Source: Euprymna scolopes (Eukaryota). Taken from it: a stretch of DNA of 64,000 nucleotides. The stretch is from the NCBI GenBank assembly GCA_053919585.1, contig CM132791.1. The stretch is one strand, 5' to 3'. The notes beneath the pieces were generated by a model. The model was not told the DNA's origin. It made no database searches and saw only the letters and a program-made list of their open reading frames with translations. How positions within the stretch are numbered: position 1 is the first letter of the stretch; each line of letters opens with the position of its first letter. This document shows, piece after piece, positions 2,058-58,580 of the stretch. The translations under genes were made by a program, and so were the position numbers.

Positions 2058-2131
2058 GGTCGTACCATTGGTTTCGTTACGCCGAATCAACGATAAGAGG
2101 TTGGAAAAAGCAGCTTAAGTTCGTCAGTGAC
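2058..2131 (-). ncRNA. Degenerate type I hammerhead ribozyme motif
   Basis: Minus strand: gtca-CTGACGA-a-cttaagctg...cggcgtaac-GAAA-cc aat gg-TA-cgacc. Core boxes are intact; stems I and II carry mismatches. Confidence 0.55.
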
Positions 2132-2287
2132 AATGAAAAACTTTACCAATGCAAAGTGAACAAACAAGGAGAAAAACGTTAAATGAGCGTTTAAGACTCA
2201 GAGTTTCAGAATTTAAAATCAAAAAAAATATAACTATAAAACCGGCGCCAATAGATTATGGAAGGAAGAAAGCGTGTATATATTTCC

Positions 2288-2600
2288 CTCTGGCTTTGGT
2301 GGAGGGGAGACTAAAACTTTCTGCTACGGTTTCAAATGATCTTAAATAACAGCAAGGGGAGACTTGATTCCAAATATTTCTCATATATTATATTTCCCCT
2401 CTTTTGGAAATAGGGCACGATTAAGAATATCCTCAGTATCAAATAATCCTTATACACTGTGAAATTTATTTTATGTATGAAAAACAAAGAGAGGAGATAT
2501 AACATGAGAAATATTTGGAATCAAGTCTCCCCTCGCTGTTATTTCAAATCATTTGAAACAATAATAGTGAGTTTTACTTACCCCTCCATCAAGGCCATAG
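2288..2600. repeat. Fold-back / MITE-like inverted repeat (~115-bp arms, ~85-bp spacer)
   Basis: 2288-2403 is the diverged reverse complement of 2488-2600 (e.g. ggggagacttgattccaaatatttctcat vs atgagaaatatttggaatcaagtctcccc). Confidence 0.8.
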
Positions 2601-2855
2601 TTTTTTGTGGAACTATAAGATAATCTGTAATTCATATACAAAACTAGGAAACAAATTACTATGATTGAAACATTTTATGGCTGTAAAAAAAAGTGCCGAA
2701 AATAGGCGCTGGATGATGGATGATCATCTTAATAAAAAGCAAATGTCACATAGCTCGCTACACAATTCAGGCCATTACCTTTCCTACGAACCTTCATTTG
2801 TTAAACTTTGATCAATAGTCGCTGAGATTTAGAACTTATAAAATTGCAAAAAGCT

Positions 2856-2887
<32 letters not shown>

Positions 2888-2890
<3 letters not shown>

Positions 2891-3075
2891 CTACTTCATT
2901 TAATCACATAAATTAATATACGAAAGTATAAATTTATTAAGTATTTAAGTATTTACTTCAACAGTGTTCAATACGTAGGTAGAGCTAGGTAGTAAGTTAT
3001 AAAATATATATGGCGATTAAGCTACACAAAATATTCCGCGTTTCATCCACACTAGGATTCATCCGGCTTATAACC
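2888..3075 (-). mobile_element. HHR-bearing short element, same family as 29667-29905; core mutated
   Basis: Clear similarity to 29667-29905. The HHR at 3018-3070 reads CGGATGA instead of CTGANGA. The element abuts a (TA)n tract. Confidence 0.8.
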
Positions 3076-3433
3076 AATCTAACTAACAAACTCATTTTAA
3101 AGCACCTGGAAAAATCTATATTAATATGTGTGTTCGATTTTTGTTTTTTTTTTTTGATAAAAAAAATTATTTAGAATTAATTAACAAATAATGTTGTTTA
3201 CATTCTCATAATTAAGTATGCTCGAACAAAATCATAATTCATTAATTTCAAATGCCATTCTGGAAGGTGAATGTTTACAGAATCGGTAAATTAATTGGAC
3301 GCTTGGATAAAAATATAAATGTATAAAGATTTACACATGGTATATTATCATTATAGATTTCTCTGAAGAAGCTCAGAATAGTGCTAAACATTATGTAAGC
3401 TAATTGTGAAGTAATTTCGTTTTCTTCATTTTT

Positions 3434-3503
<70 letters not shown>

Positions 3504-3610
3504 CTGATGATGAACTCTCGTGTTTGCATAAGTAATACCGTTATTAGATGAAACGTATATAAAATTCATATAAGGGAAAACATGCATATGTTTCCAATTC
3601 TGTATATAAA

Positions 3611-3838
3611 CTAGCAGGCCGCCGGGCGTTGCCGAGTCATAAAGTACACATAAATACTATATTTAATTAATACAGAAACTGAGGCATGTGCATGCGAGTA
3701 TCATGTTTTTTTCTAAATAGATCACTTCTTGTAAGTAAAAAAAAAAACACTCGAGCTGAGATCGAAACCAAAACCTTGAGTACATAGGTTGAGAAGTCTC
3801 CTTACACACACACATTCTCACTTTTATAGATATTTAGA
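3611..3838 (-). mobile_element. Non-autonomous Helitron-like element (228 bp)
   Basis: Minus strand starts TC (tctaaatatctataaaagtgag, then a GT microsatellite) and ends with a GC-rich hairpin and CTAG. It lies between A and T. Confidence 0.7.
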
Positions 3839-3862
3839 TTAACTGTTGCATTTAATAATCGT

Positions 3863-3864
<2 letters not shown>

Positions 3865-3924
<60 letters not shown>
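3865..3924. repeat. (AAT)n microsatellite
   Basis: Direct inspection. Confidence 0.95.
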
Positions 3925-3925
<1 letters not shown>

Positions 3926-4195
3926 TGTATTATATAAGCTAACACAATAGCAACGTATAATGCTGATCATTAGAAAAATTAAATCTAAATATTTTTTTAC
4001 ATAGGCATCATCACTTATCAAGGCATATGAGCCACTCGAGGATAAAGGTTAAAGAGTGTACAGTAGTCAATTGGATAATATAGTAATCGTTAGTAATGAA
4101 AATTCGGTAAATTTGTTAACTTAAGTGGAACGGCTCATCAAGAACTTGTTTACGTTGGACTTGAAGATATATTATATTCAAATAATAATAAATCC

Positions 4196-4930
4196 TTCTA
4201 GACTGAGACATTTTGCACAACTAATAATAGTAAGTAATTTAAAATGCAATCAGGTATTTATATTCAGAGATGAAATATCTTATTTTCTGGAAAAAAATGC
4301 AAGTAAACAATTATGTCTAGGCGTGGTATTTTTTATTTCTTTGGATTATTGTGTTATTGTTTTTGTTTTTTTTGCTGGCATAAAATAAAATACAGATACT
4401 GTTTATTTTGTTGTGATAGCATGAATTAGCACACATTATGCAGGAGAACGGGGGTTAGTAAAAAATGTGAATAAGAAATAGCAAAAAGATAATTAATAAT
4501 ATCTACAAAAAAAAAACAAAAAAACAAGAGAAAATCTTACTGAAGAAAACGTTTTTGCCAAAGGTTCCCTGTATGTATAGTAAATAAAACGCATGATGCC
4601 TACAGTTATAACAAAAAAAATGTAAATACTAGCGAACAAATATTTTATTCGTTCGAATAAGTAATTCTCCTAGACTTAAACATCTTTCAAATATTTTTCA
4701 AGTAAATGGAAAGCAACCAGGTATTTAGATCCGCACTTAAATATTTTATTCTCCAACAAAGGCGCAAGTAAACAATTATATCTACGCATAATATTTAAAT
4801 ATTTTATTTACTTTAGAACGATTGTATTGTTACATTTTTATGTATGATGCAATACAGAATATTTCAAAAGAAAATAATGATATTCATTTTGCGAAAAAAA
4901 ATCACACTGTTTATTTTATTGTAACAATGG
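4196..4930. repeat. Diverged tandem duplication (~250-bp units, ~470-bp period)
   Basis: ctagact...caggtattta...gcaagtaaacaattat...actgtttattt occurs at ~4196-4420 and ~4668-4930. Confidence 0.65.
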
Positions 4931-5006
4931 TAACTGTGTAAATAAGTAAATTTTAGTTGTTTCTATTATTTGAAAAAGTTTGTATGACATTATATCGCCG
5001 GAAATA

Positions 5007-5088
<82 letters not shown>

Positions 5089-7764: not shown

Positions 7765-8195
7765 TATAGATTTTGTAGCATTTGGATTATTGGGACTACT
7801 CTTTTCATCTCGGATATTATTCTCGAAACATCAGACGTTTTTCATGTGCATCTTGTAGATTTCAGAAATCTTTATGTCGAATTCGGGAATCAGTATTGAA
7901 TCTGGAATTGGACTTATTATTTAATCGCTTACTATTTTTCTGTAAACCATGATCGGATCGAAATCTTAAATAATTTGTAATTGTATTCTTAGTATCGCCC
8001 CCACTGAAGATTGAACCTTCAACCTCCAGAAGAAAGTAGAACTGGTCATTATTAGCACATATCCATTGCGCCACGGGCCCTTGCTACAATGGCCGAAACG
8101 TTGTGAGAATAACATCCAAAATGAGAACAGCAGTCTGAATAATCCAAATGATACAAATTATCAATCCTCATCTCAAAAATTCTAAAACGTAATTA
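7765..8195. mobile_element. tRNA-Arg-headed SINE-like element (minus, 8080->7765) joined head-to-head to a 3' partial copy (plus, ~8085-8195) with an HHR 3' half
   Basis: Minus strand begins gggcccgtggcgcaatggata (tRNA-Arg-like, A box) with B-box-like ggttcaatc. 7770-7830 is the diverged reverse complement of 8100-8160. ggccGAAACGTTgtg and the downstream tail are shared with the elements at 45.4-46.0 kb and 58.4-58.6 kb. Confidence 0.7.
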
Positions 8196-10019
8196 TAGAT
8201 ATTGTCTTGATTTATGTTCTTTGTTATTCTTTGCCTTTATAGCGCAAATTGCTTCTATCTAATGCAGCATAATTTCCTAAAGAACGGTCAGGTAATATCA
8301 AAGATACACTCATGAAAGCACTAAAATATTTCTATGCATGTCATAAAAGTAGAGATGAGGAATATTAAACAATGTGTCTCTCATGTTCATTTTACATATT
8401 AATAACTTTTACTTTTGATATAAGTTCACATAGACAGCTCGTTGACATTGCGTAGAGACGGACAGCAAGATTGAAAAATATGATATGATAGGTTCGGGCA
8501 GAGAGGAGATGCCAGCCAGTCAGCCATTCTAATTAGAATGCAAGTGTTCATTTGTGCATCCCTTTACTGGCATTTCTGCGTTGCCCTGCCCTTGATTTAA
8601 GCATGCAACAGCAATGCATGCCTGCATCATCTCTTGTCCATTTTTCTTTCCCAATAGCATGATACATTTTACCATAGATTAAGGTATCAATACCTAATTT
8701 GTTTTTACTCTTGATTCCTACTTTCTCAAATGTCAAGTTCACTTGGGCTTTATTAATGTGGATAGTATTCAAGCCCCGTCAGAAGGGATTTTATTATGAA
8801 CCCAGTCTGACTGTACAGCGTTTAAGGTAGAAAACAAGGAACTGATTAAGTTTGTTCGTATTCGTTTTCTTCTTCTTTTTTTTTTTTTGCTGCGCTTGCC
8901 TCTGCTAGTGCAGATAATTATCAATGTGATGCTGGATTTTGGCAATAAGCTTTATAAGATATTTTGATGAATGACTACAACAATTTTCTAAAATTATTGT
9001 CATTTAATTTTTATTTTGCAACTCTTCAGATTACTAGAGATAAACAGCAAATTTTTCGATTATAAGATATTCTTTTGCAATTGACATCTGCAATTTAGCA
9101 TATATGTTTTGCCACATTTTAAAAGTAAAACTGAACTATCAATCGATCTGACATATTGATATTTGATTCAAACTAGTCAATTCATCATTCCTTCCACTCT
9201 GTTATTGAAATAGACGCATTTATTTTGCATTAATTGTTTTTGAAAATAATTCTGGAAACTTTTAGAGTAGAGATTCTCTGCCTTATTCACCGAATATTCT
9301 TATATATTAAAGTGACGCAATCGTGTCATAAATATTTTCCTTAAATCGCCAAAATTTATTGCCATTTCATCTTACCATTGTTTATAAAAACGAATCAGTT
9401 AATTTTTCTTTTATTGCTGGGCAACTAGGTTTTAATATAAAGCGGTTATTTGTGAGATGATATTTTCCAATGACTTGTTCATCACTTTAAATACTTTTTT
9501 ATTCGATTTTGTTTTAATCGTGTTAGTGATTGAACAACAAATTATCAGATCAGGATTTTTAAAACTTATTCACCTTTTTATGAAGATAATTGCAACTTCA
9601 CGTCCTTTGCTGATATCATTATTAAATTATAGATTATGTTAACTTATGTTAACTATAAATTATGTTAACTTATTCATTTTTATTTATTTTAAATTCGTTA
9701 AAAAGCGTTTATAACATTACATATACATAATTAGTTTTAGTGTTCTGAAAAATGAACTTTTACAACTTGACCGCCACCGTTTGCAACATAGTAAATTAGA
9801 ATTGTCAGAGGTAAAAAAAAAATATGCTTAAAGTCAATTTCACTTAAAGTTTGTGTGAAAGGTAAAATTTGTTGTTCAAGGAAATTTTTGATTTAATAAT
9901 TCCAATCGTTTTTATAGAAATTGAACAAAACATAAAAGAGACGAAAACACAGTAATAAAACAACTAGAAAAATATTTTGTTTTTTAAAACATTTTAATTT
10001 TATAGATTAGCAAAAGCGA

Positions 10020-10073
<54 letters not shown>

Positions 10074-10575: not shown

Positions 10576-10611
<36 letters not shown>

Positions 10612-29634: not shown

Positions 29635-29666
<32 letters not shown>

Positions 29667-29670
<4 letters not shown>

Positions 29671-29901
29671 ATTTGTAAAATATATATGGCGATTAAGCTA
29701 CACTGAATATTCGGCGTTTCATCCACTCTAAGATTCGTCAGGCTTATAAGCCGAATATTCAGTGTAGCTTAATCGCCATATATATTTTATAAATTACTAA
29801 CTAGCTCTACCTACGTATTGAGCATTTTTTAAGTAAATACTTAAAGTTTACGCATAAATCTATACTTTCGTATATTAATTTTATGTGAGTAAATGAAGTA
29901 G

Positions 29902-29905
<4 letters not shown>
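29667..29905. mobile_element. HHR-bearing element inserted as head-to-head inverted arms within (TA)n
   Basis: 29667-29715 is the reverse complement of ~29750-29798. The plus arm continues to 29905 and matches 2888-3040. (TA)n lies on both sides. Confidence 0.8.
29694..29746 (-). ncRNA. Type I hammerhead ribozyme (intact core)
   Basis: Minus: taagc-CTGACGA-atct tagagt ggat-GAAA-cgccgaatattcagt-GTA-gctta. 5-bp stem I, 4-bp stem II, near-palindromic stem III, GUA triplet. Confidence 0.8.
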
Positions 29906-29934
<29 letters not shown>

Positions 29935-29945
<11 letters not shown>

Positions 29946-30285
29946 TTTAAAATATAATTATCCACTGACATGTGTTTCGTCGTCTACGACTCATCAGAAT
30001 AGATGTATCTAGTGAGATTCGAAATCGGGACCCTGCGGTAATGAGCCTAAACCCTTTATCCGCGCGTCCATCCCGCTCGACAGTCTGGATGTATCGCGAT
30101 TTATTTAGATGTTATTTGTTTTTACGATACGTTTTGAATGAATTCAATTATTTACGAAAGTGCATTTTTACCTAAATACGAGTTGCAAATAATTTTCCCT
30201 TTAACCAACTTTGTACCCCCATATGGGGAGAGGCATATATATTATTTTTTAAAATATAATTATCCAGTGACACGTGTTTCGTCGT
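29935..30285 (-). mobile_element. Retrozyme/SINE-like element: 302-nt monomer plus ~50-nt terminal redundancy, with tRNA-like head and HHR
   Basis: Direct repeat 29935-29983 / 30236-30285. GTC cleavage triplets are 302 nt apart (plus-strand gac at 29967 and 30269). A/B-box-like region at 30010-30080. Flanked by (TA)n. Confidence 0.75.
29960..30004 (-). ncRNA. Minimal type I hammerhead ribozyme (intact core)
   Basis: Minus: atctatt-CTGATGA-gtcg taga cgac-GAAA-c acat-GTC-agtggat. 7-bp stem I (2 GU), perfect 4-bp stem II, minimal stem III, GUC triplet. Confidence 0.85.
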
Positions 30286-30314
30286 ATATATATATATAAT
30301 TATTTACTATAATA

Positions 30315-30455
30315 ATTATCAAATACCTACAGACACTAGTGTTTCAGTGCAGGGTCTCACGATTAACACCAGTCGATGGATTCGAACCTGGAGAAAAAAA
30401 CCCTCTCTGGTTTCATTAGCAAATACCGTATCCATTCGGCTACCGGTAACAGCGT
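30315..30455 (-). mobile_element. tRNA-headed SINE-like element with HHR 3' half
   Basis: Minus: ggtagccgaatggata (A box)...ggttcgaatcc (B box)...GAAAC actagt GTC (palindromic stem III); the CTGANGA box is missing. Confidence 0.55.
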
Positions 30456-31341
30456 GAAATAAATTTGAAATTTAAACATTTTATTTTTAAATGTTTTTGA
30501 CGTCAGTCAGAGTGATTTAATAATTATATGATGGTCTGTGCATAAGAGCTAAATTGACCGACTTAATTCAACTGAAAGTTCACAACGATAAGAAACGCGT
30601 TTCTTAAAGGGGCTGACACAATTATTTACTATACNNNNNNNNNNNNNNNNNNNNNNNNNNNNNNNNNNNNNNNNNNNNNNNNNNNNNNNNNNNNNNNNNN
30701 NNNNNNNNNNNNNNNNNNNNNNNNNNNNNNNNNNNNNNNNNNNNNNNNNNNNNNNNNNNNNNNNNNNNNNNNNNNNNNNNNNNNNNNNNNNNNNNNNNNN
30801 NNNNNNNNNNNNNNNNNNNNNNNNNNNNGTTGACTGGGTTCAAAAACAGCCTACAGAAAATACACTCTGATTTATGAAAATATGATAGGTTATGAAAAGG
30901 AAGGGTTGTAAAGAGATAGCTTCGAATTTGGGGGTATCAAAACCAAAGCAAAATATGATGAAAGTAAAAATAAAATAGATAAACCCCATAATTTATTATA
31001 CCATACCTGTTCACACTGAAACACTTATCACAATATTCTGTGGATCTATATTAAAAAAAACTTGTTAAACTTTGTGACATATTTCCATTCTATGGAGGTC
31101 AGGCGCGAACAAACACCCCATAATTTTATTATACCATATTTCTTCAAACTGAAACATAATTATCAAAATATACTTATGCAGATAAATATGAAAAGTCTTT
31201 ATTAAAGTTTGTGCCTATTTCCATTCTATGGAGGTTAGGCGCGAACGCAGACCCCACAATTTTATTATACCATCCCTATTTAAGTTAAAACATACTTATC
31301 AAAGTATTCTTATGTACATCTATATCAAAAACACTTGTAAA

Positions 31342-33768: not shown

Positions 33769-35836
33769 TTGTAAACGTTTCTTTTTAATTTTTTAATTTT
33801 TTATTTCCATACTTTGGGAACCAGGCGCGTACACAGACTCCACAATTTTAATGAATCATCATTATGCCAGATCAAACATACCCATTCCTGTGTCTCGATA
33901 CATCTTCTATCATTATATGTGATCAGTTTCCTATAATAGTCAACCATATAGGAGCTTATTCGTGACCAAACACACACACAAAGACGTTCAGCTTTATATA
34001 TATATATTATAGATATATATATAAAACAATGTGAGGTTTCCAATATTTAATTTTTTATTTATATTTTTCATATTTGATAATTAAATGTTCTTCAGGTGCT
34101 TTGTTTTACCCCCACCCCCACCCCAAGCTGTAAATTCATTAAATTTAAGACTTGTTCTGCTTTAGTGAAGATAATTTACTCAGAGTGTGCTTTGTGCTTT
34201 TTTTGTGTGCATATGTTTATTACCATTTGTTGTAGTTAAAAATCATTCGTTTTTGTGACTTTTTTTTTTGGAAAAATATGTTTTTGTTGTCAAGTGTGTA
34301 TGTGTGTATGCCTGCGTTTATTCTCTGTGTGTATTTATTATCCATTGTGTGTGTGGCCGTTTGTGTATTTGTTCTGTTTCGATATGTGTGAGTTTGTATG
34401 CGTGTTTTTGTGGGTAGGTGTTCCTGTTTCCCTGTAGTGTGTGTAGGAGAATGTTGATGCATCTCTGTTGGTATGCTTTGTGTGTCTATGCATGTTTAGT
34501 TTCATATATCATAGATCAGCATATATATTTTCGTTCTGCATATTTATATTTTAGATATTAAAAAGGGATGATAATAGTGTATGTTGGTGTTTAGCATGTT
34601 GTGTGTATGTGTGCAACTTAGCCACTATGCTTCTTTTGCTTTGTGTATGCGTGTGCGCCTGTTATTCATACATGCATATCTCTTATATCATGATCTATAT
34701 GAAANNNNNNNNNNNNNNNNNNNNNNNNNNNNNNNNNNNNNNNNNNNNNNNNNNNNNNNNNNNNNNNNNNNNNNNNNNNNNNNNNNNNNNNNNNNNNNNN
34801 NNNNNNNNNNNNNNNNNNNNNNNNNNNNNNNNNCTAAGTAATGTAAACAAAATCTTTCATTGTAAGCCATGATTAATGAGAATGGCAATTAATAGAGCAC
34901 ATATCACTGTCAAGACTCAAACTAATTACCAATGTAAATAAAAACGAATATAATAAAACTTTAATTAATTGACGCTCCAATTATAGGAAGAAAAACCTGA
35001 ATAAGTTAAATTTTATATCGAATTTCAAACATGCTTTCTCCAAATATTTAACTTATAAAGCAAAATAAATGCAGAGTTGGCGTTTCATCCACCAAACAGT
35101 TTTAAACTATTTAACTTGAAAACCAAACAATTCCTGTACTCACTTCCATCATAATTTGGTTGAGTTTTATGCAGTTTATCAACAACAAATACACAAATAA
35201 ACACAAATGAAACAAAACAAAACTTCTGTCAAATTTCAAAATTTGTTTTGTTTTGGTTTGTGTTTTTTTAAAATTATTTTCTGTAGCGTTGTTATGATTT
35301 TTTTATGGTGTATCACACTATTTTCAGATTACTTAATTCCAAAGCAAAATATCAGTTGCATATGATTATAAATGATTAATACATCTCATAGTTTTCCTTG
35401 ATAACATTTTGTGCATCGACCGAATTTGAACTTGAGATAGTTAACTCCACAATTTGCAGCAATATCCAATACTCAATCATATAGTCTCAGAAAACATATA
35501 ATTAGAATATATGACTCGTTATCCAACAGTGAATATAATTGAATATTTACAATTATATTAAAGTTGAGCTAATCAACGTTTTTATTTTTTTCCTTACTGC
35601 TTTTTTCGGTACTGGTACAACTTTTGAACCAGACAGAACCAATTTTTGTATGGCATAATCAGTGTGATTTCGAAAACAGCCAGTACATGCTAAAGTGGTA
35701 GATTAATCAGAAGACTCACGATAAGTTGATCTGCACCCCAAAAAAAATAATTTTTTTTCGTAAAATAAATCATTAGTTTTTTCACACAAAAATAAAATTT
35801 TTGAAAATTAACTTTTACTTTTCCCCGTGAAAAGAA

Positions 35837-36100
35837 AAACATTTATTTCATTGATTATCTTTATAAAATATAAACATTTATTTCATTGATTATCTTTATA
35901 AAATATAAACATTTATTTCATTGATTATCTTTATAAAATATAAACATTTATTTCATTGATTATCTTTATAAAATATAAACATTTATTTCATTGATTATCT
36001 TTATAAAATATAAACATTTATTTCATTGATTATCTTTATAAAATATAAACATTTATTTCATTGATTATCTTTATAAAATATGACATTTATTTTATTGATT
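35837..36100. repeat. 35-bp minisatellite, ~7.5 copies
   Basis: Unit aaacatttatttcattgattatctttataaaatat, nearly perfect copies. Confidence 0.95.
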
Positions 36101-36196
36101 AAATATAAATGACAGTGTTTGGTTTTGATGCCGCTTCATTTTAATTCAACTTCTTCTGACTTTTTTTTTTCATTTTTCTTAAACTTTTTCTTCTAG

Positions 36197-37108: not shown

Positions 37109-37900
37109 TCTATATATATAAAAGCGAAAATGTGTGTATGTATGTATGTTTGTATGTATGTATGTTTGTATGTGTGTTTGTATGTCTCGCAAAAACTTTC
37201 GACACGGGTCACGGATTTTCACAACATTGGTATCATTTTAAAGCTCGATCCTTCGCCCGACAAATATTGAAAAATTGGCCAAAAATATTAATTCTTTCGC
37301 CCTAAAATCATCAGTTTTCTACAGGGAGGGGTCAGCAAAAATCGTCCTCTCATGGCAAGTTCGCTTCTACATATTTGCAAATGACGTCGGAACATGATTT
37401 AGTGTAAATATTAAAAAAACCGACCTAATTTTGTCAACATCGTCTTAGTTCAGTTCATTATCTAAAGGTTTTGGGTTCGAATCGTGGTGTAAGATAACTT
37501 TTTTGTTTTTTTTTTCGATTTTTAAATTTTAATATTGAAACAGGGTTATTTAAGCCATTTTTCACGTTCGATGTTTTTTTTGTTTTTATTTTTCAGATTT
37601 TTTAAAGAAGTTTTAACGTTCGTTTTTCTGTTTTCTTTTTCCATCACATTCGCGTTTTCTTTTTTGTTTTCTTTTTCCGATTTTTATATTAAACATCGTT
37701 TGTTTGCCTTACGTTAATTTTTTTTAGTGTTTTTTTTTCGATTTTTTAAAGTTTTAACATTTATTTTATATAAAATGTTTAATAATTTGTTATTTAATAT
37801 TTAAAAATATTTACTTCGCTTATTCTTATGTTTTGATTACCCCCCATTCCCGAGCACACACGCCTCTAAACACCCGGGCAACGCCGGGTACCCCCGCTAG
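37109..37900 (+). mobile_element. Complete non-autonomous Helitron (792 bp)
   Basis: A|TCTATATATATAAAAGCG 5' end, GTAT microsatellite, subterminal hairpin cccgggcaacgccggg, CTAG|T 3' end, no TSD. Confidence 0.85.
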
Positions 37901-37913
37901 TCAAGAATAAAGG

Positions 37914-38065
37914 CGTGTGTGCTTAGTTTAACGGATACCATGATTAACTGATTGATCTGTGTTGTCAGGTTCGAATCCAATCAAATCTATTCTGTTTTTT
38001 TTAGTATCAAATACTGTTAGGAAAGGTATGAACCTGCAATTTCATCCCTACTATGAGTAAATTAG
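37914..38065 (+). mobile_element. tRNA-derived SINE fragment
   Basis: A-box-like tagtttaacgg and B box ggttcgaatcc followed by a SINE-like body. Confidence 0.5.
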
Positions 38066-40880: not shown

Positions 40881-40882
<2 letters not shown>

Positions 40883-43135: not shown

Positions 43136-43176
43136 GCACCTGAAGAGCGTCAGTGTTTCTATCAGTCGAAACGTTA
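43136..43176 (+). ncRNA. Decayed minimal HHR-like relic
   Basis: CTGAAGA-g...cagtc-GAAACGTT with the AACGTT palindrome; stems I and II are largely lost. Confidence 0.35.
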
Positions 43177-43262
43177 AAATAATAACATCTAAAATTTAAA
43201 AAAAACTAATCCAAATAATACAAAAAAATTCATAATGTTTTCCATTCAATTTTATTGCAACA

Positions 43263-43317
<55 letters not shown>

Positions 43318-44868: not shown

Positions 44869-45421
44869 AAAGAAAACTATTGTTTATGAATGTTAATGTA
44901 CTAAATCTGCGGTCTTGCTTACAGTTTGTTGACCAAACTGTATAAAACTCTTGCTTTAAAGTTTCTATATGCTGAAGAATATGAACCGCTCCAAACCATT
45001 CAAATATAATTAATGCATATTAATGAGATCTAGGTTAATCATGTTTTAAGGGAAATTGATTTAATGAAAGCGAACGATTATGAAATAATAAAATGACAGT
45101 ATTTGAGTTAATGCGATTTCATACAAGAATACTATGTTGATTTTGTTAAAGTGATGAATTATGAAAAGACAGAATGATGATTAGAGGTAGTTTTTGACCC
45201 GTAGAATATGAACCATAGTTTCTATGTCTAAATAAAGGAGAATTGCTCAATATCGTTGAAATGCAGTATATGAAATATTTGATATATGTTAATAAATATA
45301 AAAGATTGTTATTGTAATGTGTACCAGTATCCTCTGTAACTGGTATTGCTAAAATTTTGTATTTTACCAAATAAGTACAGGTTTAACATTTAAATTAATT
45401 TAGTGATCATTATGAATTTCA

Positions 45422-45978
45422 GTAATTGTCTGTATTTTTGAGATGAGGTGTTTTCATTTATTGAAATTGTCGGACTGACCTCCTCATCTTGGTTGTTATA
45501 GTCACAACTTCGGCCGTTTTGCCCTCGGCCTTCATGAGGTGTTTTGTATCGAACTGGGGAACCGTTTGTTAGGAGTCTTGAACCCAACCCTGTATTATTA
45601 TTACAGGAGTACCGTGTTCGGACTCTAGCTAGGCTCTGAGACATAGTTGCTGATTCTCTGTTTTGAATGTTACTTTTCACTGCCTTCGTTTAGGATTGAA
45701 CTCAAAGTTTACAGTTACCCAAAGGTGCTGAGTTCAATCCTGAACGAAGGCAGTGAAAAGTAACATTCAAAATAGAGAATCAGCAACTATGTCCCAGAGC
45801 CTAGCTGGAGTCCAAACACGGTACTCCCGTAATAATAATAAATCGTTGGGTTCGAGACTCCTAACAAACGGTTCCCCAGTTCGATACAAAACACCTGATG
45901 AAGGCCGGAGGGCAAAACGGCCGAAACGTTGTGACTATAACAACCAAGATGAGGAAATCAGTCCGACAATCTCAATAA
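45422..45978. mobile_element. Head-to-head inverted HHR-bearing element with 13-bp TSD
   Basis: Arms at ~45455-45704 and 45729-45978 with a 24-nt spacer. ATTATGAATTTCA occurs at 45409-45421 and 45979-45991. Confidence 0.88.
45892..45933 (+). ncRNA. Minimal (dimer-type) hammerhead ribozyme
   Basis: cac-CTGATGA-a-ggccg gagggcaaaa cggcc-GAAA-c-GTT-gtg. AACGTT palindrome replaces stem III; extra A before stem II; short 3-bp stem I. Confidence 0.7.
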
Positions 45979-48598
45979 ATTATGAATTTCAAAGCACATG
46001 TATTAGACATAACAGGACAAAATCTTGGCTTTGCTTTGTTTAAGTTGGTTTTATGCAAAGGGGCGTGAAAAAAGTATAGAAGCCTTCATGAAAATTCAGA
46101 CAACTTCGATTTTTGTGAAATTTGAACAATAGTTATTAGGCATCAATAAATATTTCTCAAGTTTCAGTTTCTTAGGAATATTGTAAAGGGGTTTACAGTA
46201 AGTAATGTGGGCACAACCCCTTATTTAAAATTTAAATATTTCAGATTTGCATTGAATTTGATCCATAGTGAGATTAAGATTCTACGAATTTCAATTTCTT
46301 TTTAACTGACTTAAAATTTAGTTATTTTCTAGAATATAAATTATGTAATGGGTTTTGATCGAAATTGTAATAAGGGTTAGAATCATTATATTTTGGTATT
46401 AATCTTCGTAAGAGGGCATAAACGTGGTGCAAAACTGTTCTGTTCAGGGAATTCATTTTATTAGCTCTTGGATGGGCATTGTTCTAGTTCCCTATAAAAT
46501 TATCTACAAAAATACATAAAAGCATTTAATACATATCAACACCTGCGTGAATGTTCTCCTTATATACTGGACAAAATATTTACACATGATTTAATTTATT
46601 TATTTAAATATTATTTGTGATATAAAATGAGCCAGACCCTTGTAACGAAGCCACTTTTCTATGGTGTTATTTCTACCACTAATTTAAATAATGTATGTAT
46701 TGTTTGATTTGACTGTTTTGTGTTTATTTTATATCCAAATTCAATGCATATTATAAACAATTCATTTTATACCATTGTTCGAACACATGTTGCTATTTTG
46801 CTTAGAGTTGAGATAAAAATTGTGGGTTTCTACCTTTTCTAAGCATATTAGTGCATAATCGAACAAGAGATCCGATACAAATTGAACTCAGCATTCCCGA
46901 TTCCATAGCCTTTACATATGTGCTCACGTTTTGAGTTTTCTGATCTTCTAATGTTGTTTTCTGTCTATCATTTTAACTTTATGTCACAAGTGTTGGTAAC
47001 TATTCACGCTATACATAATCAGTTATGTTTGATCCGGTGTTTCTCCACGCCTTCAGAGAACAGCATGTTTCACATTTATATTCGCTGCAACACCTGCATA
47101 GTATTGAATGCGCACATGTCTTGTTTATGTTCATAATAAAATGATATGTCTATAAATAACGTTAGTAAGTAGTGCCTACATCTGGAAGAATACAATTTGA
47201 ATCATCAGACAACCTCTGCGCATAAATCTATCTTGAGTGTTTCATGACCACTCTCCCCATCAGACAAGTTATGTTACATGATAGAGACAGACATGAACGT
47301 ACATATTGGCTTAGAATCTTTTCTTGTCTCTACGAGTTCAGCAAGGATTTAGAATATGTACAGTTTTCACCTGTAGTTGTATGAAGAAGATATGGTGTCA
47401 TAACTTTATCAAGAGTATTAGTGGATTTAAACCAATAGTAACAGCTGGAATTGAACACATAATGCCGAATTCGCTGTTTGAGCGAGTAGACAGTTGTGGC
47501 TCCCAATAAATAAATCAATTTCAATTAGATTTTTATCTAAGCTTTCAAATTATATGGTTCTTCTTTTTACCTACAAAATATTATTAAATGAACTTTATTT
47601 ATTTACATGTTTAAATGTTATCTTGACTGTTGCTATGTTTACTATGTTTCCACATCTACTACTCTTTGTATTCTTTTTTCAATTCTTAGTAGTCGGTAAC
47701 TTTCGGGGAATTTTTATCTTAAGCCTTTATTAAGGTTACCAGAGTTAACTCATTTTGCATTCGATATTTTCAGATATCTAATATAAGTTCATTATTCTGG
47801 ATCATGGATTGAACACACATCACAACCAAGCGGCTGAAGAATTAATGCTGAAACTACACTCTAAACCATTGTGCAATCATAATGTTTATAAATAAATCTA
47901 CATCAGACATAATTGTACAGTTTTAATCTAATGTTTCAAATTGTATGATACTTCCAATTTCAAAACAGTTCGTACATTATTATTGTTATCATTATTATAA
48001 TTTGATAATCATTAATTTTCTCAATTATTCATTTTTTTATTCTTNNNNNNNNNNNNNNNNNNNNNNNNNNNNNNNNNNNNNNNNNNNNNNNNNNNNNNNN
48101 NNNNNNNNNNNNNNNNNNNNNNNNNNNNNNNNNNNNNNNNNNNNNNNNNNNNNNNNNNNNNNNNNNNNNNNNNNNNNNNNNNNNNNNNNNNNNNNNNNNN
48201 NNNNNNNNNNNNNNNNNTATGAATATCAATATGAATAAGTATCAGAATAACATTGATTTTTTTTCATTGATCATTAACTTTTACCAACATTCTGTCACTT
48301 TATAAGGTAAATGTTATCAATTCGAGAATATCAATTACATTTCTGGCAAAACCAACTGTTACAAAGAGGACAATAAGTTAAGTTATTTATGTAAAAGTTG
48401 GTTTACCTTGGGATAGGAAATAATATTACCCGATTAAATCGAATGCATAATTCAACAAGTATTGAATATTATGAGGGTTTTTTATATTAATTCTAAGTAT
48501 AAATGTTTGAAATTTAAAAATAGTTCATTGTCTGCTGCCATCTCTTAATATAATCACTGTTGAATGCAATCTGATACGTTCATTTTTATGTTGCACTA

Positions 48599-48641
<43 letters not shown>

Positions 48642-54277: not shown

Positions 54278-54547
54278 TATATATCATCCAATTTTTATAA
54301 GCAAATATGTAAAGTGTGAACAGTCAGATAAATATGCATGAAAATTTATTGGCAAGAAAGTTTTTAAAAACTAAATATGCCACACAATTAGATTTGTTTT
54401 CTGCTAGTTTTATATTTTTTAAACAAATTATCTAAGCAAGTAAAACATGCTAGTACAAAGAACATCTTTCGAACAAACACTGAAGGCATTCCAAAATAAT
54501 TGTAAAAAAAATAACTTAACCTTCTGGTTGTTTACCATAGATGATTT

Positions 54548-54604
<57 letters not shown>

Positions 54605-56859
54605 AACTGCAGATTTGAAAACTATTGGTTATTTTGAGTTCAGCTTTGTTTGGCAATTCATCATGAAGAGACTGACACTTGAAAAACATTTGCAAATTGC
54701 TAATTTAAAGAGAGAAGCATTTGATGAATAAATAATTTCACGAAGTCGATCTGTCAACTTTCCACCTTTATTGTGCGATTTAACCCCACTAGATTACATT
54801 CTTCTTTGAAGTTTTTTGAAATAACGTGAACAAGTTCTTGATGGGACATGCCCTTAAGTAATCCAATTTACTAAATTTCCCCTACCAACGATTCTTACGA
54901 TATTTTCTCATTGACTCATTAACTCTTATCCTCAAGTGGCCTCCAGGCCTTGATAATAGTGACTCCTTTGTAAAAAAAAAAGATATATAAATTCCCATGT
55001 TGACGCTGATAACCAGATGCAAGAGACCACTTTACAGACAACATTCGATCCGTTATTGCCAAAATACTATCTAATTTACTGCTTCGAATTTGTAACAACT
55101 TAAACCTCTAGATTAGCTTATACAAGCACGAGTTGCTGGGCCGAAATTGTATTTTAATTATAAATGCTTAAAATTATACTTTGGAATAAATCACAGATTT
55201 TATTATAAAAATATTTTTCTGTTATTTATTTTTATTTAAAGTTCACCGTCTCTAAAAAAACAAACACTCTTTATATATCTCAGAGTGATCATAGGCTCGT
55301 TTTTCATAGCTTTCAGAATTTGCAGCTGCACCGACCTCTGTAATTAAAAAGTCTATATGGAGAGCATATACAGCTCTTTAAAATATTCTCACTTTTTCAT
55401 CGACAATGCTAAAGCATAGCTTTCAATATTCTCAACCAAAAAATAGGCTAATACATAAAATTTCCCATCACAAGGATGTCACTAGAGTAACAAATAAGAC
55501 TGACAAGATTAACAAATATAATTCTTGTATGGGTTTCCCCACTAACTCCATTTCTTCCTCCTTACAACCACAATTTGAGTTTAAAATAGTGACATAATTT
55601 ACTCAACACAAAAGGCTGCCCTCACTTTCTGTAAGGATACTTTTTCCCAACTAGCATCTATAAAATAAAATCTGCTGCTACTATTAATAACAATCTGGCA
55701 AAAAAGTCCAAGTTAAACAAGTATACACTGCCATTGTCTTATCAACTGTAAAGTCGAGTTTGATAAATCAGCTTATCTCCTGTTAGACGGTTCGAAATGG
55801 TTCAAAGAAATATTGGTAAATTTCAATTGAAAATTCTCAAAACGCCATATCTGTTACTCATCTAATTTATTTCATCTACTAAAGTAGAGACTGACACCTG
55901 AACAGCGTTTGCAAAATTATACGATTCTTCTTTTTATATGTTGGAGTGGCACCCCTACAAATTCTTACGATGGACTATTGCTGACGTCACTTTTGGTAAC
56001 CAGTTTCTGCTATTGAGCAGTCTGAACCTTAGACTAACTTTGTCCTTCCAGTTGAAAAGAGTCGCACTCAACCAATATACGTTTCTGTATTTTCTGTTAA
56101 TATATATTTCATTTCACTGTTTCCAAGCCTTCTCATTTTTCTTTCAACATCTAAGCCACAACAGTATGTTATTTGATTCTTTTTCAAAATCATATGATGC
56201 CTTCTTTTACCTGGATGAGATAATAGTAGTGTGACGTGAATGGGAGTGAAATTGATTTTAGTGAAACTCCAATAAATTGAACAATCATTGTGTAAATCGT
56301 AAAATGTACAAGAATTATCTATAAAATTGAATATATTGTAAAAGTTGAATGCATTGCTTTAAAAAATAAATAAAACAACGTCCCTCCACAAACCCAAGAA
56401 GCAACACCCTTCCTTTTTATATGTAAACTTTTTTTTATTTTATTTAAACTTGTTGCTAAAATGTTTTTGTCTGAAGATCCTACCCATGATANNNNNNNNN
56501 NNNNNNNNNNNNNNNNNNNNNNNNNNNNNNNNNNNNNNNNNNNNNNNNNNNNNNNNNNNNNNNNNNNNNNNNNNNNNNNNNNNNNNNNNNNNNNNNNNNN
56601 NNNNNNNNNNNNNNNNNNNNNNNNNNNNNNNNNNNNNNNNNNNNNNNNNNNNNNNNNNNNNNNNNNNCTCCTTCTATTCACTTCTCTTAGTAACAGCTTC
56701 TACACTTCCATTTTAGTAACAACAGCATGCGTACGATTATTTCATTTTTTTTCAATTGTGTTAAAGCTCTCAATCAGTTTGCTCATTTGAAAAGGCTCTA
56801 TTAGGTGGAAATAAATTTATAATGAGATTTAGTTGTTTGTCGTCTTTTATTCTTTTATC

Positions 56860-56920
<61 letters not shown>

Positions 56921-57699
56921 TGTGTTTGTGTTTGCCTTTGTGTGTGTATTGACATGTACAAAAGATATTCCACATGAATGCTAGTCGTGATGAGAATGAT
57001 TAAAGCCTTGTTACATTGATGAAGTGTAAGTAACCAAGATATTTTCAATCAGTGAGAGAGGATGCCACTTAGAAATTAAATGCATTTCACTATCACTATA
57101 GATAATCAAGTTGAGAAGAAGGTGAGAGAATCCAAAATCCAGATGCAAGCACATCATATAATTTCATACTCCTGCACCCCCTCCTTTTTAATCCATTTTT
57201 ATTCGATTTTTTTTTTCACTTTTTTTGTTCGCATTATTTAACTCCAATTCTTTATGCAAGTTTTATCCTTTTTACAACTTGTCCAACTTTTCACTCGTTT
57301 CTGATAAGCCGTGTAGATTTTGATCTACATTTTCTGCAACACAATATCTAATGCCGCTGCGGATTTATTGGATGCGCTTAGCTACTCATCTGTAGTTTGT
57401 AGAGATTTTAATTCTTCATGAATCTTAAATTTCTTAGAATTTCTTTTGCAGTCCTCATCCCACCTCCATCCCCTCTCTCATGTTTGTGCAAGTTGTAATC
57501 TTATTATGTCTGGATCTAGAAATCGTATAAAATTCATTTTGTTTAAAATGTTCATTTCAAAACTCTGTGCCTTTCTGTACTTAATCATTATTTTTTTGCG
57601 TGTGTATGTTTTCATTTTACATATTGAATTCTTATTATTAAAAATAATTTTTTTCTCCATCCTTATTATTTATTTGCATGATGTATATTTCTGAAAAGG

Positions 57700-57701
57700 A
57701 A

Positions 57702-57752
<51 letters not shown>

Positions 57753-57998
57753 AGTTATACATATGTACATTGAAATGTATGGATAAACATACATATGCAT
57801 GCGTTGAAATGTGTTAAATGTGTGGTTTTATACTTTATAAATGCGTGTGTATGCTACATTAAGGATATGTGTCTGAGGAAATATACATATGTTATATATG
57901 TGTGTGTATGTAAAGAAGTACATATATATGTGTGCGTGTGTGTGTGTGCGTGTATTTGTGTGTGTGTGCGAAAATAGAGCTTTATCTATCAATACAGA

Positions 57999-58059
<61 letters not shown>

Positions 58060-58200
58060 TAGATATCCATAGGCACGTGTTTCGCTGTCTTGTGTATATA
58101 TATAGAGAGAGATGCATATTTATATATATATGTGTATTTTTGTGGATATATATTCATGTCTATGCAGATATGTGTATTCTGTGTACATATTTTTTGTATA
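57700..58200. repeat. (TA)/(TG)-rich low-complexity tract
   Basis: Direct inspection. Confidence 0.9.
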
Positions 58201-58379
58201 TAATCAACTCCATAATAGGTAGCCTTCAGTACATGGTAATGTGAAAAGTGGCTTTCAGGACATGTCAATATGAAAAGTCGGCTACAGAATATGGTTATGT
58301 TTGAAACACTTCTGAATAACAATACTTGATTAATACCTAAAATCGGTTATGGCTCACAAAACAAGAACAAACTACATTT

Positions 58380-58580
58380 ATTAATTAAATAAAAGGTTCA
58401 GTTCAAAATTCTGCATAAGTTGTCATGTTCGAACTCAAAATTCCCAAGTTCGTAAAGATAACCTGATTAGGATTCGAGATTTCATCAGTTGAAACGTTGT
58501 GAAATAAGAAAGCAGGATGAAAACAGTGGTGAAAATAATACAAATTATCATCATCTCCAAAATTGCAAAACATAACTTGT
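58380..58580 (+). mobile_element. Old copy of the HHR-SINE family (cf. 8085-8195, 45729-45978)
   Basis: ttcccaagttcg...cCTGATTAgg...GAAACGTTgtg...aatacaaattatca..tctccaaaatt; HHR core mutated. Confidence 0.6.

What the first reader, a model, noticed from the sequence alone, without database searches (positions are those of the whole stretch)
2058..58580. High density of hammerhead-ribozyme mini-elements from several families: candidate Penelope-dependent SINE/retrozyme system
Seen: HHR cores or half-cores at 2058, 3018, 8092, 14361, 15405 (half), 15723, 29694, 29960, 30265 (half), 30330 (half), 43136, 45500, 45892 and 58460. They represent at least five different sequence contexts, and four have intact cores. 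Most have a palindromic stem III (AACGTT, ACGATCGT, ACACGTGT, ACACTAGTGT, GAATATTC). Four loci are head-to-head inverted pairs, several sit in (TA)n, and at least three have tRNA-like A/B boxes upstream. Established: Penelope-like elements carry minimal HHRs in their pseudo-LTRs and insert as partial tandem or inverted repeats; animal non-LTR retrozymes are short HHR-containing monomers. Inference: several non-coding families here combined a Pol III head with an HHR and are mobilised in trans by PLE RT/GIY-YIG, which is not encoded in this window.
Basis: partly seen in the sequence, partly recalled or inferred. Interest (0 to 1): 0.85.

Follow-up and report, generated by a model that had tools for sequence, protein, structure and literature searches.

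The report
Hammerhead-ribozyme retroelement copies, ordinary here
The window holds real but mostly decayed copies of several small jumping elements that carry a self-cutting hammerhead RNA motif; one family is the tail of a Penelope-like retrotransposon, and the density is simply the norm for this 5.9-Gb mollusc genome.

Summary
Thirteen of the 14 listed sites lie in repeat families that carry type I hammerhead (HHR) motifs. The fourteenth, 14361, is single-copy and a chance match. Four motifs are complete, against 0.23 expected in shuffles. Two are canonical (29967-29997 and 29699-29741, both minus). Two are variants (45895+ is a Penelope-type minimal HHR; 15730+ has a long helix II).

At least six families are present:
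- Family B (GAATATTC) is not a SINE. It is the 3' end of a Hydra-clade Penelope-like element (GIY-YIG ORF, then TATA box, HHR, tail and (TA)n).
- Families A and D and the old 8092 and 58460 copies are tRNA-box-headed SINE-like elements.
- Family C is a roughly 291-bp retrozyme-like unit.
- Families E and F are non-coding (TA)n-targeted elements.

The head-to-head pairs, partial tandems and (TA)n sites are confirmed and recur genome-wide.

No Hydra-type Penelope ORF was found in the window. The genome holds at least 70 uninterrupted Hydra-type RT+nuclease frames.

The density is not special. The two-box HHR pattern occurs 122,209 times genome-wide (reversed control 1,086), which predicts 1.3 per 64 kb; the window has 2.

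Trans-mobilisation and cleavage remain inferred. The scan reported these families earlier on other DNA of this genome. Verdict: new members of a known kind.

The parts
2030..2277 (-). Family F copy: a non-coding repeat ending in an AT-rich tail plus (TA)n. It carries CTGACGA and a GAAAC half-core (2058-2135), but no closing helix II.
   Evidence: At least 1632 genome candidates at 86-92% identity over this span. The sequence and fold show no canonical HHR.
2858..3073 (-). Family B copy: the 3' end of a Hydra-clade Penelope-like element, starting at the HHR. The HHR (about 3018-3070) is disabled by U4 changed to G. It ends in (TA)n.
   Evidence: 90% identical to 29750-29934. Family alignment.
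7772..8075 (-). Old tRNA-derived SINE copy, the left arm of a head-to-head pair. The A box is at 8063-8073, a B-box-like motif lies near 8010, and the HHR region is decayed.
8085..8200 (+). Inverted, 5'-truncated tail fragment of the same SINE superfamily. It starts at the GAAACGTT half-core (the listed site 8092).
   Evidence: Inverted repeat 7772-7824 against 8105-8157. Many genome copies begin at this same point at 85-91% identity.
14361..14430 (-). Chance co-occurrence of CTGATGA and GAAAC. Not part of the system.
   Evidence: Single-copy in the genome. Fold z-score +1.5 and no helix II. It lies next to a mariner transposase remnant.
15298..15491 (-). Family E inverted fragment (element positions 93-286). 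It has a 3' HHR half with A14 changed to G, and its outer end abuts (TA)n.
   Evidence: 97.4% inverted repeat with 15745-15938. In other loci the inverted fragments also end at position 286.
15653..16073 (+). Family E main copy, from an element of about 490 nt with no ORF noted. It has a fixed 5' end. Its complete HHR (15722-15840) has CTGACGA, a helix II with a roughly 75-nt extension, and an ACGATCGT helix III. The copy is cut by the assembly gap at 16074.
   Evidence: At least 1471-1890 candidates at 95-99% identity, nearly all starting at 15641-15656. Descriptor hit. The L084 copy has a perfect 8-bp helix II extension and one compensatory change.
29666..29749 (-). Family B short arm (element positions 1-84) holding a complete canonical type I HHR at 29699-29741. 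Helix I has 5 bp, helix II AUC/GAU is 3 bp in this copy (4 bp, AUCC/GGAU, in the family consensus) and helix III has 4 bp in this copy (7 in the consensus). H17 is A.
29750..29934 (+). Family B long arm (positions 35-216), joined head-to-head to the short arm. It ends in (TA)n.
   Evidence: Loose ends at 29747 in RNA and DNA contigs continue into the family's upstream region.
29945..30235 (-). Family C unit (about 291 nt): a tRNA-related segment with a B-box-like motif (30010-30080), a canonical HHR (29960-30004, core 29967-29997) and an AT-rich tail running into (TA)n.
   Evidence: At least 5783 candidates at 87-93% identity. Consensus HHR. Rfam Hammerhead_1 scores 25.4 bits here and 27.8-31.5 bits in other copies.
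30265..30288 (-). Family C 5'-truncated fragment (3' HHR half plus tail), forming a partial tandem with the full unit.
   Evidence: Other loci show the same arrangement.
30296..30470 (-). Family D copy: a tRNA-derived head (A box 30432-30442, exact B box 30378-30388) followed by a GAAAC-ACTAGT-GTC 3' half-core (30330-30350). There is no CUGANGA box.
   Evidence: At least 2404 candidates at 78-86% identity. Boxes. Related copies stand in tandem with a 346-nt period in L029.
43136..43178 (+). Degenerate remnant of the GAAACGTT-type HHR (CTGAAGA ... GAAACGTT). Helix II is not closed.
45421..45718 (-). Family A left arm, 5' truncated, with the full tail. Its HHR is mutated (CTCATGA and GAAGTT, about 45500-45541).
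   Evidence: 493-bp inverted repeat at 90.7% identity. Sequence.
45719..45980 (+). Family A right arm: the B-box part of the tRNA-like head, the body, and a Penelope-type minimal HHR at 45895-45933. Helix II is GGCCG/CGGCC with a bulged A, helix III is the AACGTT core, and helix I has 3 bp.
   Evidence: At least 1260 candidates at 95-98% identity. Full-length alignment. Descriptor hit. The exact 39-nt core occurs 2083 times in the genome.
58056..58085 (-).
58300..58580 (+). Old SINE copy of the GAAACGTT-tail superfamily. Its HHR (58463-58505) is disabled (CTGATTA).
   Evidence: At least 584 candidates at 69-81% identity. Sequence.

Best explanation
The window is ordinary repeat-rich DNA of a 5.9-Gb mollusc genome. 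It has collected insertions from at least six retroelement families that carry a type I hammerhead ribozyme.

The families:
- Family B is the 3' terminal region of a Hydra-clade Penelope-like element (PLE). Its order is GIY-YIG ORF, about 430 nt, CCAAT and TATA boxes, HHR, about 160-nt tail, (TA)n.
- The other families are non-coding passengers. A, D and the older GAACGTT-tail copies are SINE-like elements with tRNA-type A/B boxes. C is a retrozyme-like unit of about 291 nt. E and F are non-coding elements.

Likely life cycle (inferred):
1. Transcription, from Pol III boxes or from the PLE terminal promoter.
2. HHR processing of longer-than-unit RNA. The minimal motifs would act as dimers.
3. 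Target-primed reverse transcription by PLE RT and GIY-YIG nuclease supplied in trans, mostly at (TA)n.
4. This leaves 5'-truncated copies, partial tandems and head-to-head inverted pairs.

In this window nearly all copies are dead.
For: Shown:
- Every listed site except 14361 belongs to a family with hundreds to thousands of genome copies.
- The window has 4 complete HHRs against 0.23 in shuffles.
- Family consensus HHRs are intact, and they differ in all three helices while keeping the core. Helix II is GUCG/CGAC, AUCC/GGAU, GGCCG/CGGCC or GGAGA/UUUCC. More helix II pairs appear genome-wide: GCCC/GGGC, GUUG/CAAC, GCUG/CAGC, GAUG/CAUC.
- Rfam Hammerhead_1 passes its cut-off at 73 of 74 scored genome places.
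- Family B's HHR lies about 430-450 nt downstream of a GIY-YIG ORF in L062, L063, L083, L090 and L091.
- That ORF has the CxCX5C linker, no CCHH motif and a CxxC-E motif. It aligns with RT-bearing coral proteins. These features, together with a canonical HHR and (TA)n insertion, define the Hydra clade (PMC8557442, section 11).
- At least 70 uninterrupted 590-768-aa Hydra-type frames exist in the genome, often in tandem or head-to-head clusters.
- Family A's motif matches the published PLE minimal HHR: a long helix II with a bulged 5' base and a palindromic minimal helix III. The published motifs also occur as pairs on opposite strands (PMC4209133).
- Head-to-head pairs recur. 11 of 29 family B loci have one. 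Among the first 100 exact family A cores there are 13 close (-,+) pairs and no (+,-) pair.
- Family B, C, E and F copies end in or next to (TA)n.
Against: - No motif in the window reaches Rfam's gathering score.
- Within families B and C the paired columns covary no more than shuffled controls, so inserted copies decay neutrally.
- Laid RNA reads show both strands and no clustered ends at the predicted cleavage sites.
- ARAGORN and the Rfam scans report no tRNA match for the 'tRNA heads'. Only the box motifs support a tRNA origin.
- No sequence similarity was found between A, C, D, E or F and the family B PLE 3' region.
- The two intact Hydra-type ORFs that I could check by coordinates (on contigs C1 and C2) have no exact A-, B- or C-type core nearby.
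- The L062 and L091 ORFs lack the conserved C-terminal N/CxH block, so those copies are probably defective.
Confidence: 0.8

Rival explanations
1. The tRNA-headed families (A, C, D and the old SINEs) are ordinary SINEs copied by a LINE (CR1, RTE or similar). The hammerhead is only a passenger motif with no link to Penelope-like enzymes.
For: A/B boxes are the SINE hallmark. No tail shared with an autonomous PLE was demonstrated. LINEs are abundant in cephalopod genomes (PMC8967140).
Against: None of the copies inspected ends in a poly(A) tail. Their ends lie in (TA)n or in a conserved AT-rich tail. Head-to-head pairs occur with a strict (-,+) orientation, and partial tandems occur; both are PLE signatures. 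The motif is the PLE-specific minimal HHR. Hydra-clade PLEs target (TA)n.
Confidence: 0.12
2. The inverted pairs (45.7 kb, 15.5 kb, 29.7 kb and 8 kb) are DNA-level structures such as MITE or foldback transposons or local duplications, not products of reverse transcription.
For: The arms are long and similar (493 bp at 90.7%, 194 bp at 97.4%). The centre of the family A pair even scores as a plant microRNA-like hairpin.
Against: Most copies of the same families are single and share a fixed 3' end with variable 5' ends. The arms are unequal and truncated at different points. Spacing between paired cores varies from 54 to 2800 nt, always in the same orientation. No terminal inverted repeats were noted at the outer ends; target-site duplications were not examined.
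Confidence: 0.05
3. Most of the listed sites are chance matches to a short, loose motif in AT-rich DNA.
For: CTGATGA alone is only about 1.8-fold over shuffles. One site (14361) is indeed chance. Several 'half-cores' have no second box.
Against: The window has 4 complete motifs against 0.23 expected. It has 2 matches to the two-box pattern against 0.02 expected. Genome-wide the two-box pattern occurs 122,209 times against 1,086 for the reversed control. Thirteen sites lie in repeat families whose consensus or younger members carry the motif.
Confidence: 0.03

Closest known systems
Hydra clade of Penelope-like elements (Craig, Yushenova, Rodriguez and Arkhipova 2021, PMC8557442)
   Same: Family B's ORF has a C-terminal GIY-YIG domain, a CxCX5C linker and no CCHH motif. 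A canonical HHR lies downstream, and insertion is into (TA)n. The genome's intact frames are 590-768 aa (short elements) and sit in tandem or inverted clusters.
   Different: The paper reports only a small number of mollusc families. Here the first-look candidates number in the tens of thousands. The family B copies in hand carry a C-terminal deletion and an N-rich insert. Many short copies start about 33 nt after a TATA box, right at HHR helix I.
Minimal hammerheads of Penelope-like elements (Cervera and de la Pena 2014, PMC4209133)
   Same: Family A and its older relatives have a helix II of 5-6 bp with a bulged base at its 5' end, a minimal palindromic helix III (AACGTT) and a short helix I. 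They are widespread as single motifs or as pairs on opposite strands.
   Different: Here the motif sits in an element of about 350 nt headed by tRNA-type A/B boxes, not in the pLTR of a coding PLE. The coding partner was not identified.
Animal non-LTR retrozymes (Cervera and de la Pena 2020, PMC7229834; Li, Clavereau and Pollet 2026, bioRxiv 10.64898/2026.07.22.740005)
   Same: Units of about 290-410 bp with low GC content and a type I HHR, arranged in tandem or partial tandem. They are non-coding and are proposed to depend on PLEs.
   Different: In this window there is only one full family C unit plus a fragment. The units include a tRNA-related segment and target (TA)n. Circular RNA was not shown.
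Schistosome Sm-alpha / Sj-alpha SINE-like elements with hammerheads (Ferbeyre et al. 1998, as cited in PMC4209133; the remaining details are from my own knowledge)
   Same: A Pol III-type tRNA-like head combined with an HHR in a short, abundant retroposon.
   Different: The host phylum is different and there is no detectable sequence relation. Here there are several independent families and two HHR styles (canonical and minimal).

Membership tests
Type I hammerhead ribozyme (Rfam RF00163) | Conserved core CUGANGA ... GAAA ... UH in the type I order, with helices I, II and III | tested here: met
   Four window motifs pass a descriptor that requires the core and all three helices, against 0.23 in shuffles. 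The family consensus sequences are intact.
Type I hammerhead ribozyme (Rfam RF00163) | Score at or above Rfam's gathering cut-off (34 bits) | tested here: not met
   The best window score is 25.4 bits. Family C copies elsewhere score 27.8-31.5 bits. Other families in the same genome score 42-57 bits.
Type I hammerhead ribozyme (Rfam RF00163) | Helices supported by covariation | tested here: inconclusive
   There is none within families B and C. It is clear between families, and there is one compensatory change between family E subfamilies.
Type I hammerhead ribozyme (Rfam RF00163) | Self-cleavage at H17 | not testable with these tools
   Laid RNA reads show no clustered ends, but the libraries are oligo-dT or contig-based and are not suited to the question.
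PLE minimal hammerhead | Long helix II with a bulged 5' base, a minimal palindromic helix III and a short helix I | tested here: met
   Family A has CTGATGA, a bulged A, GGCCG...CGGCC, then GAAACGTT followed by GTG. The definition is in PMC4209133.
PLE minimal hammerhead | Located in the pLTR of a coding Penelope-like element | tested here: inconclusive
   All family A copies in hand are SINE-like. Some paired cores are 0.9-2.8 kb apart, too far for two SINE copies, but those places could not be read.
Hydra-clade Penelope-like element | C-terminal GIY-YIG nuclease without the CCHH motif, and a CxCX5C linker | tested here: met
   Alignment A3 of L091, L062 and the homologs. Protein-atlas neighbours carry PF01541 and PF26215. 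Pfam itself gave no hit for these proteins.
Hydra-clade Penelope-like element | Reverse transcriptase in the same ORF | tested here: inconclusive
   The family B loci hold only the RT thumb and pieces around the Y-x-DD motif. The homologs P0081 and P0095 show RT motifs. The genome has at least 70 uninterrupted frames covering residues 4-580 of P0081. Their link to the B-type tail was not shown.
Hydra-clade Penelope-like element | Canonical HHR in the terminal region and insertion into (TA)n | tested here: met
   compared with PMC8557442 section 11.
Hydra-clade Penelope-like element | Phylogenetic placement of the RT within the clade | not tested
   No reference set of PLE RTs was available.
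Animal non-LTR retrozyme | Tandem units of 150-450 bp, each with a type I HHR | tested here: met
   The feature is met at family and genome level: partial tandems in most of the 30 family C loci fetched, and arrays with periods of 323, 346 and 410 nt. In the window there is only one unit plus a fragment.
Animal non-LTR retrozyme | Expressed as unit-length linear and circular RNA | tested here: inconclusive
   Family sequences are present in poly(A) RNA-seq contigs and in raw reads. No back-joined unit was clearly supported.
tRNA-derived SINE | Internal Pol III A and B boxes at the 5' end | tested here: met
   In the family A consensus the A box matches exactly and the B box is a looser, B-box-like match. 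Family D has a 10/11 A box and an 11/11 B box. The old copy at 8010-8075 has both. Family C has only a B-box-like motif. Families E and F have none.
tRNA-derived SINE | Head recognisable as a tRNA | tested here: not met
   ARAGORN finds none in the window. Rfam reports no tRNA match at E up to 10 in the window or up to 1 in full-length copies.
tRNA-derived SINE | 3' tail shared with the autonomous partner | tested here: inconclusive
   A conserved tail of about 100 nt is shared among family A, 8092 and 58460. No coding partner with that tail was found.

The most novel reading that the evidence does not exclude
The GAAACGTT-tail elements (young family A plus the older 8092 and 58460 types) may form a superfamily of tRNA-derived SINEs. 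Its shared 3' module would be a Penelope-type minimal hammerhead plus a tail of about 100 nt. That would make it a SINE/PLE partnership defined by a shared 3' end, alongside a massive, still intact expansion of Hydra-clade PLEs in a cephalopod-like genome. Together these could account for the SINEs said to be nearly absent from decapodiform repeat annotations.
Probability: 0.3. Interest if true: 0.55.

Novelty: new member of a known kind. Interest (0 to 1): 0.35.

Why it matters
The finding adds a mollusc host to a known kind of system. That host has about 1.2 x 10^5 hammerhead cores and several independent families. It also gives a direct physical link, in this genome, between a canonical hammerhead and a Hydra-clade Penelope-like ORF. 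For genome annotation, these families (thousands of copies each) should be masked as PLE-related. They should not be left unclassified or read as microRNA-like hairpins. For ribozyme biology, the natural series of helix variants could be useful for cleavage assays. The series includes a minimal dimeric motif, a canonical motif with a 7-bp helix III, and a motif with a 75-nt helix II insert. The window itself holds nothing exceptional.

Tried and rejected
- Rfam at gathering score gave nothing in the window. The 'MIR7533' and mir-297 type hits are the family A palindrome centre and (TA)n, not microRNAs.
- ARAGORN and the Rfam scans found no tRNA in the heads.
- Pfam gave no GIY-YIG or RT hit for the family B ORFs or their homologs. 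The identification rests on motif reading, homologs and protein-atlas neighbours.
- Minimum-free-energy folding of single motifs does not discriminate; z-scores run from -1.8 to +1.5.
- Within-family covariation tests were flat.
- RNA evidence: family sequences occur in RNA-seq contigs and in raw single-cell reads on both strands, but there are no clustered ends or well-supported back-joints. This is no evidence either way for cleavage or circles.
- I tried to fetch intact PLE loci to compare their 3' ends with the SINE tails. I did not work around it.
- BLAST between families and against the family B 3' UTR showed no cross-family similarity.
- My first idea was that family E is a pLTR followed by the start of a coding PLE. 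I rejected it because the L084 copy ends in (TA)n about 60-75 nt beyond the point where the window's copy meets the gap.
- My first idea was that the long family B form ends about 750 nt upstream of the HHR. I rejected it because in L063 and L090 the ORF runs to the edge of the locus.

Full report
SCOPE. The finding lists 14 hammerhead (HHR) cores or half-cores across a 64-kb window. It reads them as Penelope-dependent, Pol III-headed mini-elements. I checked each site, defined the repeat family behind it in the window's own 5.9-Gb genome, tested the motif statistics, and looked for the proposed helper.

ARE THE MOTIFS THERE, AND ARE THEY MORE THAN CHANCE?
- The sequences are at the stated places.
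- Rfam finds nothing at its gathering scores. Its only sub-threshold hit is Hammerhead_1 at 29960-30004 minus (25.4 bits, cut-off 34).
- A strict type I descriptor (core plus three helices) finds two complete motifs: 29997-29967 minus and 29741-29699 minus.
- A relaxed descriptor, allowing one extra base after A9 and a long helix II, finds four. The extra two are 15730 plus and 45895 plus. Dinucleotide shuffles give 0.23 +/- 0.48, and 0 of 200 reach four.
- The site at 14361 is single-copy in the genome and has no closing helix II. It is a chance match beside a mariner transposase remnant.

FAMILIES. Self-comparison and genome searches place the other 13 sites in at least six families.
- Family C (29945-30235 minus). 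The unit is about 291 nt, with at least 5783 first-look candidates at 87-93% identity. The consensus core is CTGATGA-GTCG-TAGA-CGAC-GAAAC-ACGTGT-C. Its exact 31-nt form occurs 3085 times in the genome (reversed control 0). Arrays begin at variable unit positions and end at unit position 291 or near position 130, both abutting (TA)n. The window has one unit plus a 3' fragment at 30265-30288. A further fragment at 58056-58085 was not listed.
- Family A (right arm 45719-45980). At least 1260 candidates at 95-98% identity. The exact 39-nt core occurs 2083 times. Full-length copies start with a tRNA-like head that has an exact A box and a looser B-box-like motif. About 200 nt further on comes the HHR, then a conserved tail.
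- Older relatives of family A. The copies at 7772-8200 and 58300-58580, and the remnant at 43136, share the GAAACGTT core. The first two also share the following tail.
- Family D (30296-30470 minus). It has the best tRNA-type boxes but only the 3' half of an HHR. Related copies stand in 346-nt tandems elsewhere.
- Family E (15653-16073 plus). An element of about 490 nt with a fixed 5' end. No ORF or tRNA-type box was noted in it. It has at least 1471-1890 candidates at 95-99% identity. Helix II carries a roughly 75-nt extension. In a diverged copy that extension pairs perfectly over 8 bp, with one compensatory change relative to the window's copy. The window's copy runs into the assembly gap at 16074. 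I did not infer its missing end.
- Family F (2030-2277 minus). Another element flanked by (TA)n, with only half-core resemblance to an HHR.

FAMILY B IS A PENELOPE-LIKE ELEMENT'S TAIL.
- The copies are at 2858-3073 and 29666-29934. The family has at least 1298 candidates. Its 27-nt core occurs 1847 times.
- In 11 of 29 loci the similarity continues upstream through a TATA box (about 33 nt before helix I) and CCAAT boxes.
- About 430-450 nt further up lies the stop codon of an ORF. That ORF carries, in order, an RT-thumb-like block, a CxCX5C linker, GIY...YIG...R...H, and CxxC-E.
- Its relatives are coral and mollusc proteins. The longer ones show RT motifs. Protein-atlas neighbours carry GIY-YIG and HTH_animal.
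- These features, with the canonical HHR and (TA)n insertion, are those given for the Hydra clade of PLEs (PMC8557442 section 11).
- The genome has at least 69,602 first-look candidates for such a protein. At least 70 are uninterrupted 590-768-aa frames covering residues 4-580 of the coral protein, and many sit in tandem or head-to-head clusters.
- A second set of GIY-YIG frames of 800-870 aa points to canonical PLEs as well.
- tblastn with Hydra-type proteins finds no such ORF in the window. I did not search the window for canonical PLE ORFs.
- The ORFs next to B-type tails that I could read lack a conserved C-terminal block and carry an N-rich insert, so they look defective.

INSERTION SIGNATURES.
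- All four head-to-head pairs are real, and the pattern recurs across the genome.
- 11 of 29 family B loci have a short inverted arm covering element positions from about 3 to 58-92. The outer end of that arm lies in the element's internal AT-rich tract, usually next to (TA)n.
- Family A shows 13 close (-,+) pairs and no (+,-) pair among the first 100 exact cores. Spacings run from 54 to 2800 nt.
- Family E's inverted fragments always end at element position 286.
- Short family B copies mostly begin at positions 1-12, just downstream of the TATA box. This suggests (inference) that they are retrocopies of a short transcript from the PLE's terminal promoter.
- The asymmetry of the arms fits two primings at a nicked (TA)n better than simple snap-back synthesis (inference).

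STATISTICS AND DENSITY.
- Within families B and C the paired columns behave like shuffled controls, as expected for neutrally decaying copies of a master element.
- Between families, all three helices differ while the core is kept. The genome-wide list adds further helix II pairs.
- The loose two-box pattern CTGATGA-N9-24-CGAAAC occurs 122,209 times in the genome, against 1,086 for its reversed control. That is about one per 48 kb, or 1.3 per 64 kb.
- The window has 2 matches, against 0.02 in shuffles.
- So the motif density is far above random sequence but equal to this genome's average. The 'high density' is a property of the genome, not of this locus.
- Rfam Hammerhead_1 exceeds its cut-off at 73 of 74 scored genome places, including arrays with about 410-nt periods.

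RNA.
- Poly(A) RNA-seq contigs and raw single-cell reads contain family B and C sequences, on both strands. There are no clustered starts or ends at the predicted cleavage sites and no well-supported back-joins.
- The libraries are unsuited to the question, so this neither supports nor refutes cleavage or circular RNA.

COMPARISON WITH WHAT IS KNOWN.
- Minimal HHRs in PLE pLTRs have a long helix II with a bulged 5' base and a palindromic minimal helix III. They are frequent as single motifs or as pairs on opposite strands. All this was described in 2014 (PMC4209133). Family A fits that description exactly.
- Animal retrozymes were described in 2020 (PMC7229834).
- tRNA-like heads joined to HHRs are known from schistosome Sm-alpha (cited in PMC4209133).
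- I found no paper describing HHR elements in cephalopods or this host. Penelope elements are reported as abundant there, and SINEs as scarce in decapodiforms (PMC8967140).
- Earlier follow-ups of this scan had already reported the C- and D-type arrays and the palindromic SINE on other DNA of this genome. First-reader notes had flagged GIY-YIG relics upstream of hammerheads. I re-derived these points independently.

LIMITS.
I could not read the 3' ends of the intact PLEs.
- As a result the shared-tail test for families A, C, D, E and F is open.
- For two intact Hydra-type frames on contigs C1 and C2, the coordinate lists show no exact A-, B- or C-type core nearby.
- No Dfam or Repbase comparison was possible.

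VERDICT. The window is an ordinary sample of a genome-wide population of Penelope-related hammerhead elements: new members of a known kind.

Noticed in passing
window 59235-63994: A 33-bp satellite with about 144 copies at 93% match runs to the end of the window. It explains the strong AT and GC skew and the long spurious ORFs on both strands there.
   Followed up: partly
window 13824-14252 (+): An ORF with a partial mariner-type DDE transposase domain (Pfam Transposase_1, E 7e-6). It is a DNA-transposon remnant next to the chance 'HHR' at 14361.
   Followed up: no
window 16405-16698 and 30983-31314: Two short arrays of the same 136-bp tandem repeat. Each lies a few hundred bases beyond an assembly gap that follows an HHR-element cluster.
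   Followed up: no
window 37880-38000 (+): A tRNA-like segment with an exact B box (37968-37978). The string ATCTATTCTG follows it, the same as helix I plus the start of the core in the window's family C copy. A T-run comes next, as if a Pol III terminator cut an HHR element short.
   Followed up: no
window 45648-45785: The Rfam 'MIR7533' hit (80 bits, E 3e-14, far below its cut-off of 230) is only the centre of the family A head-to-head palindrome. Such pairs could be mis-annotated as microRNA precursors.
   Followed up: yes
L091 1810-2814 (-) and L062 787-1041 (+): Compared with their coral relatives, the Hydra-type ORFs next to B-type tails have an N-rich insert of about 45 aa before the CxCX5C linker. 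They also have a deletion of about 21-25 aa that removes the conserved N and CxH block of the nuclease.
   Followed up: partly
G000 C16:23483150-23490600, C27:15780662-15793142, C18:96665867-96669519 and C23:7722212-7725796 (coordinates only): Uninterrupted Hydra-type RT+nuclease frames with near-identical scores sit in tandem (3.4-4.4 kb spacing) and in head-to-head clusters. This suggests recent activity.
   Followed up: no
G000 C8:10432194-10435515 and C1:2303617-2304610 (coordinates only): Regular hammerhead arrays: 9 units with a period of about 410 nt, and 4 units with a period of 323 nt. Each scores above the Rfam cut-off or carries an intact core. These are full retrozyme-type tandems, unlike anything in this window.
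   Followed up: no
window 35830-36101: A 35-bp tandem repeat with 7.8 copies at 97% match.
   Followed up: no
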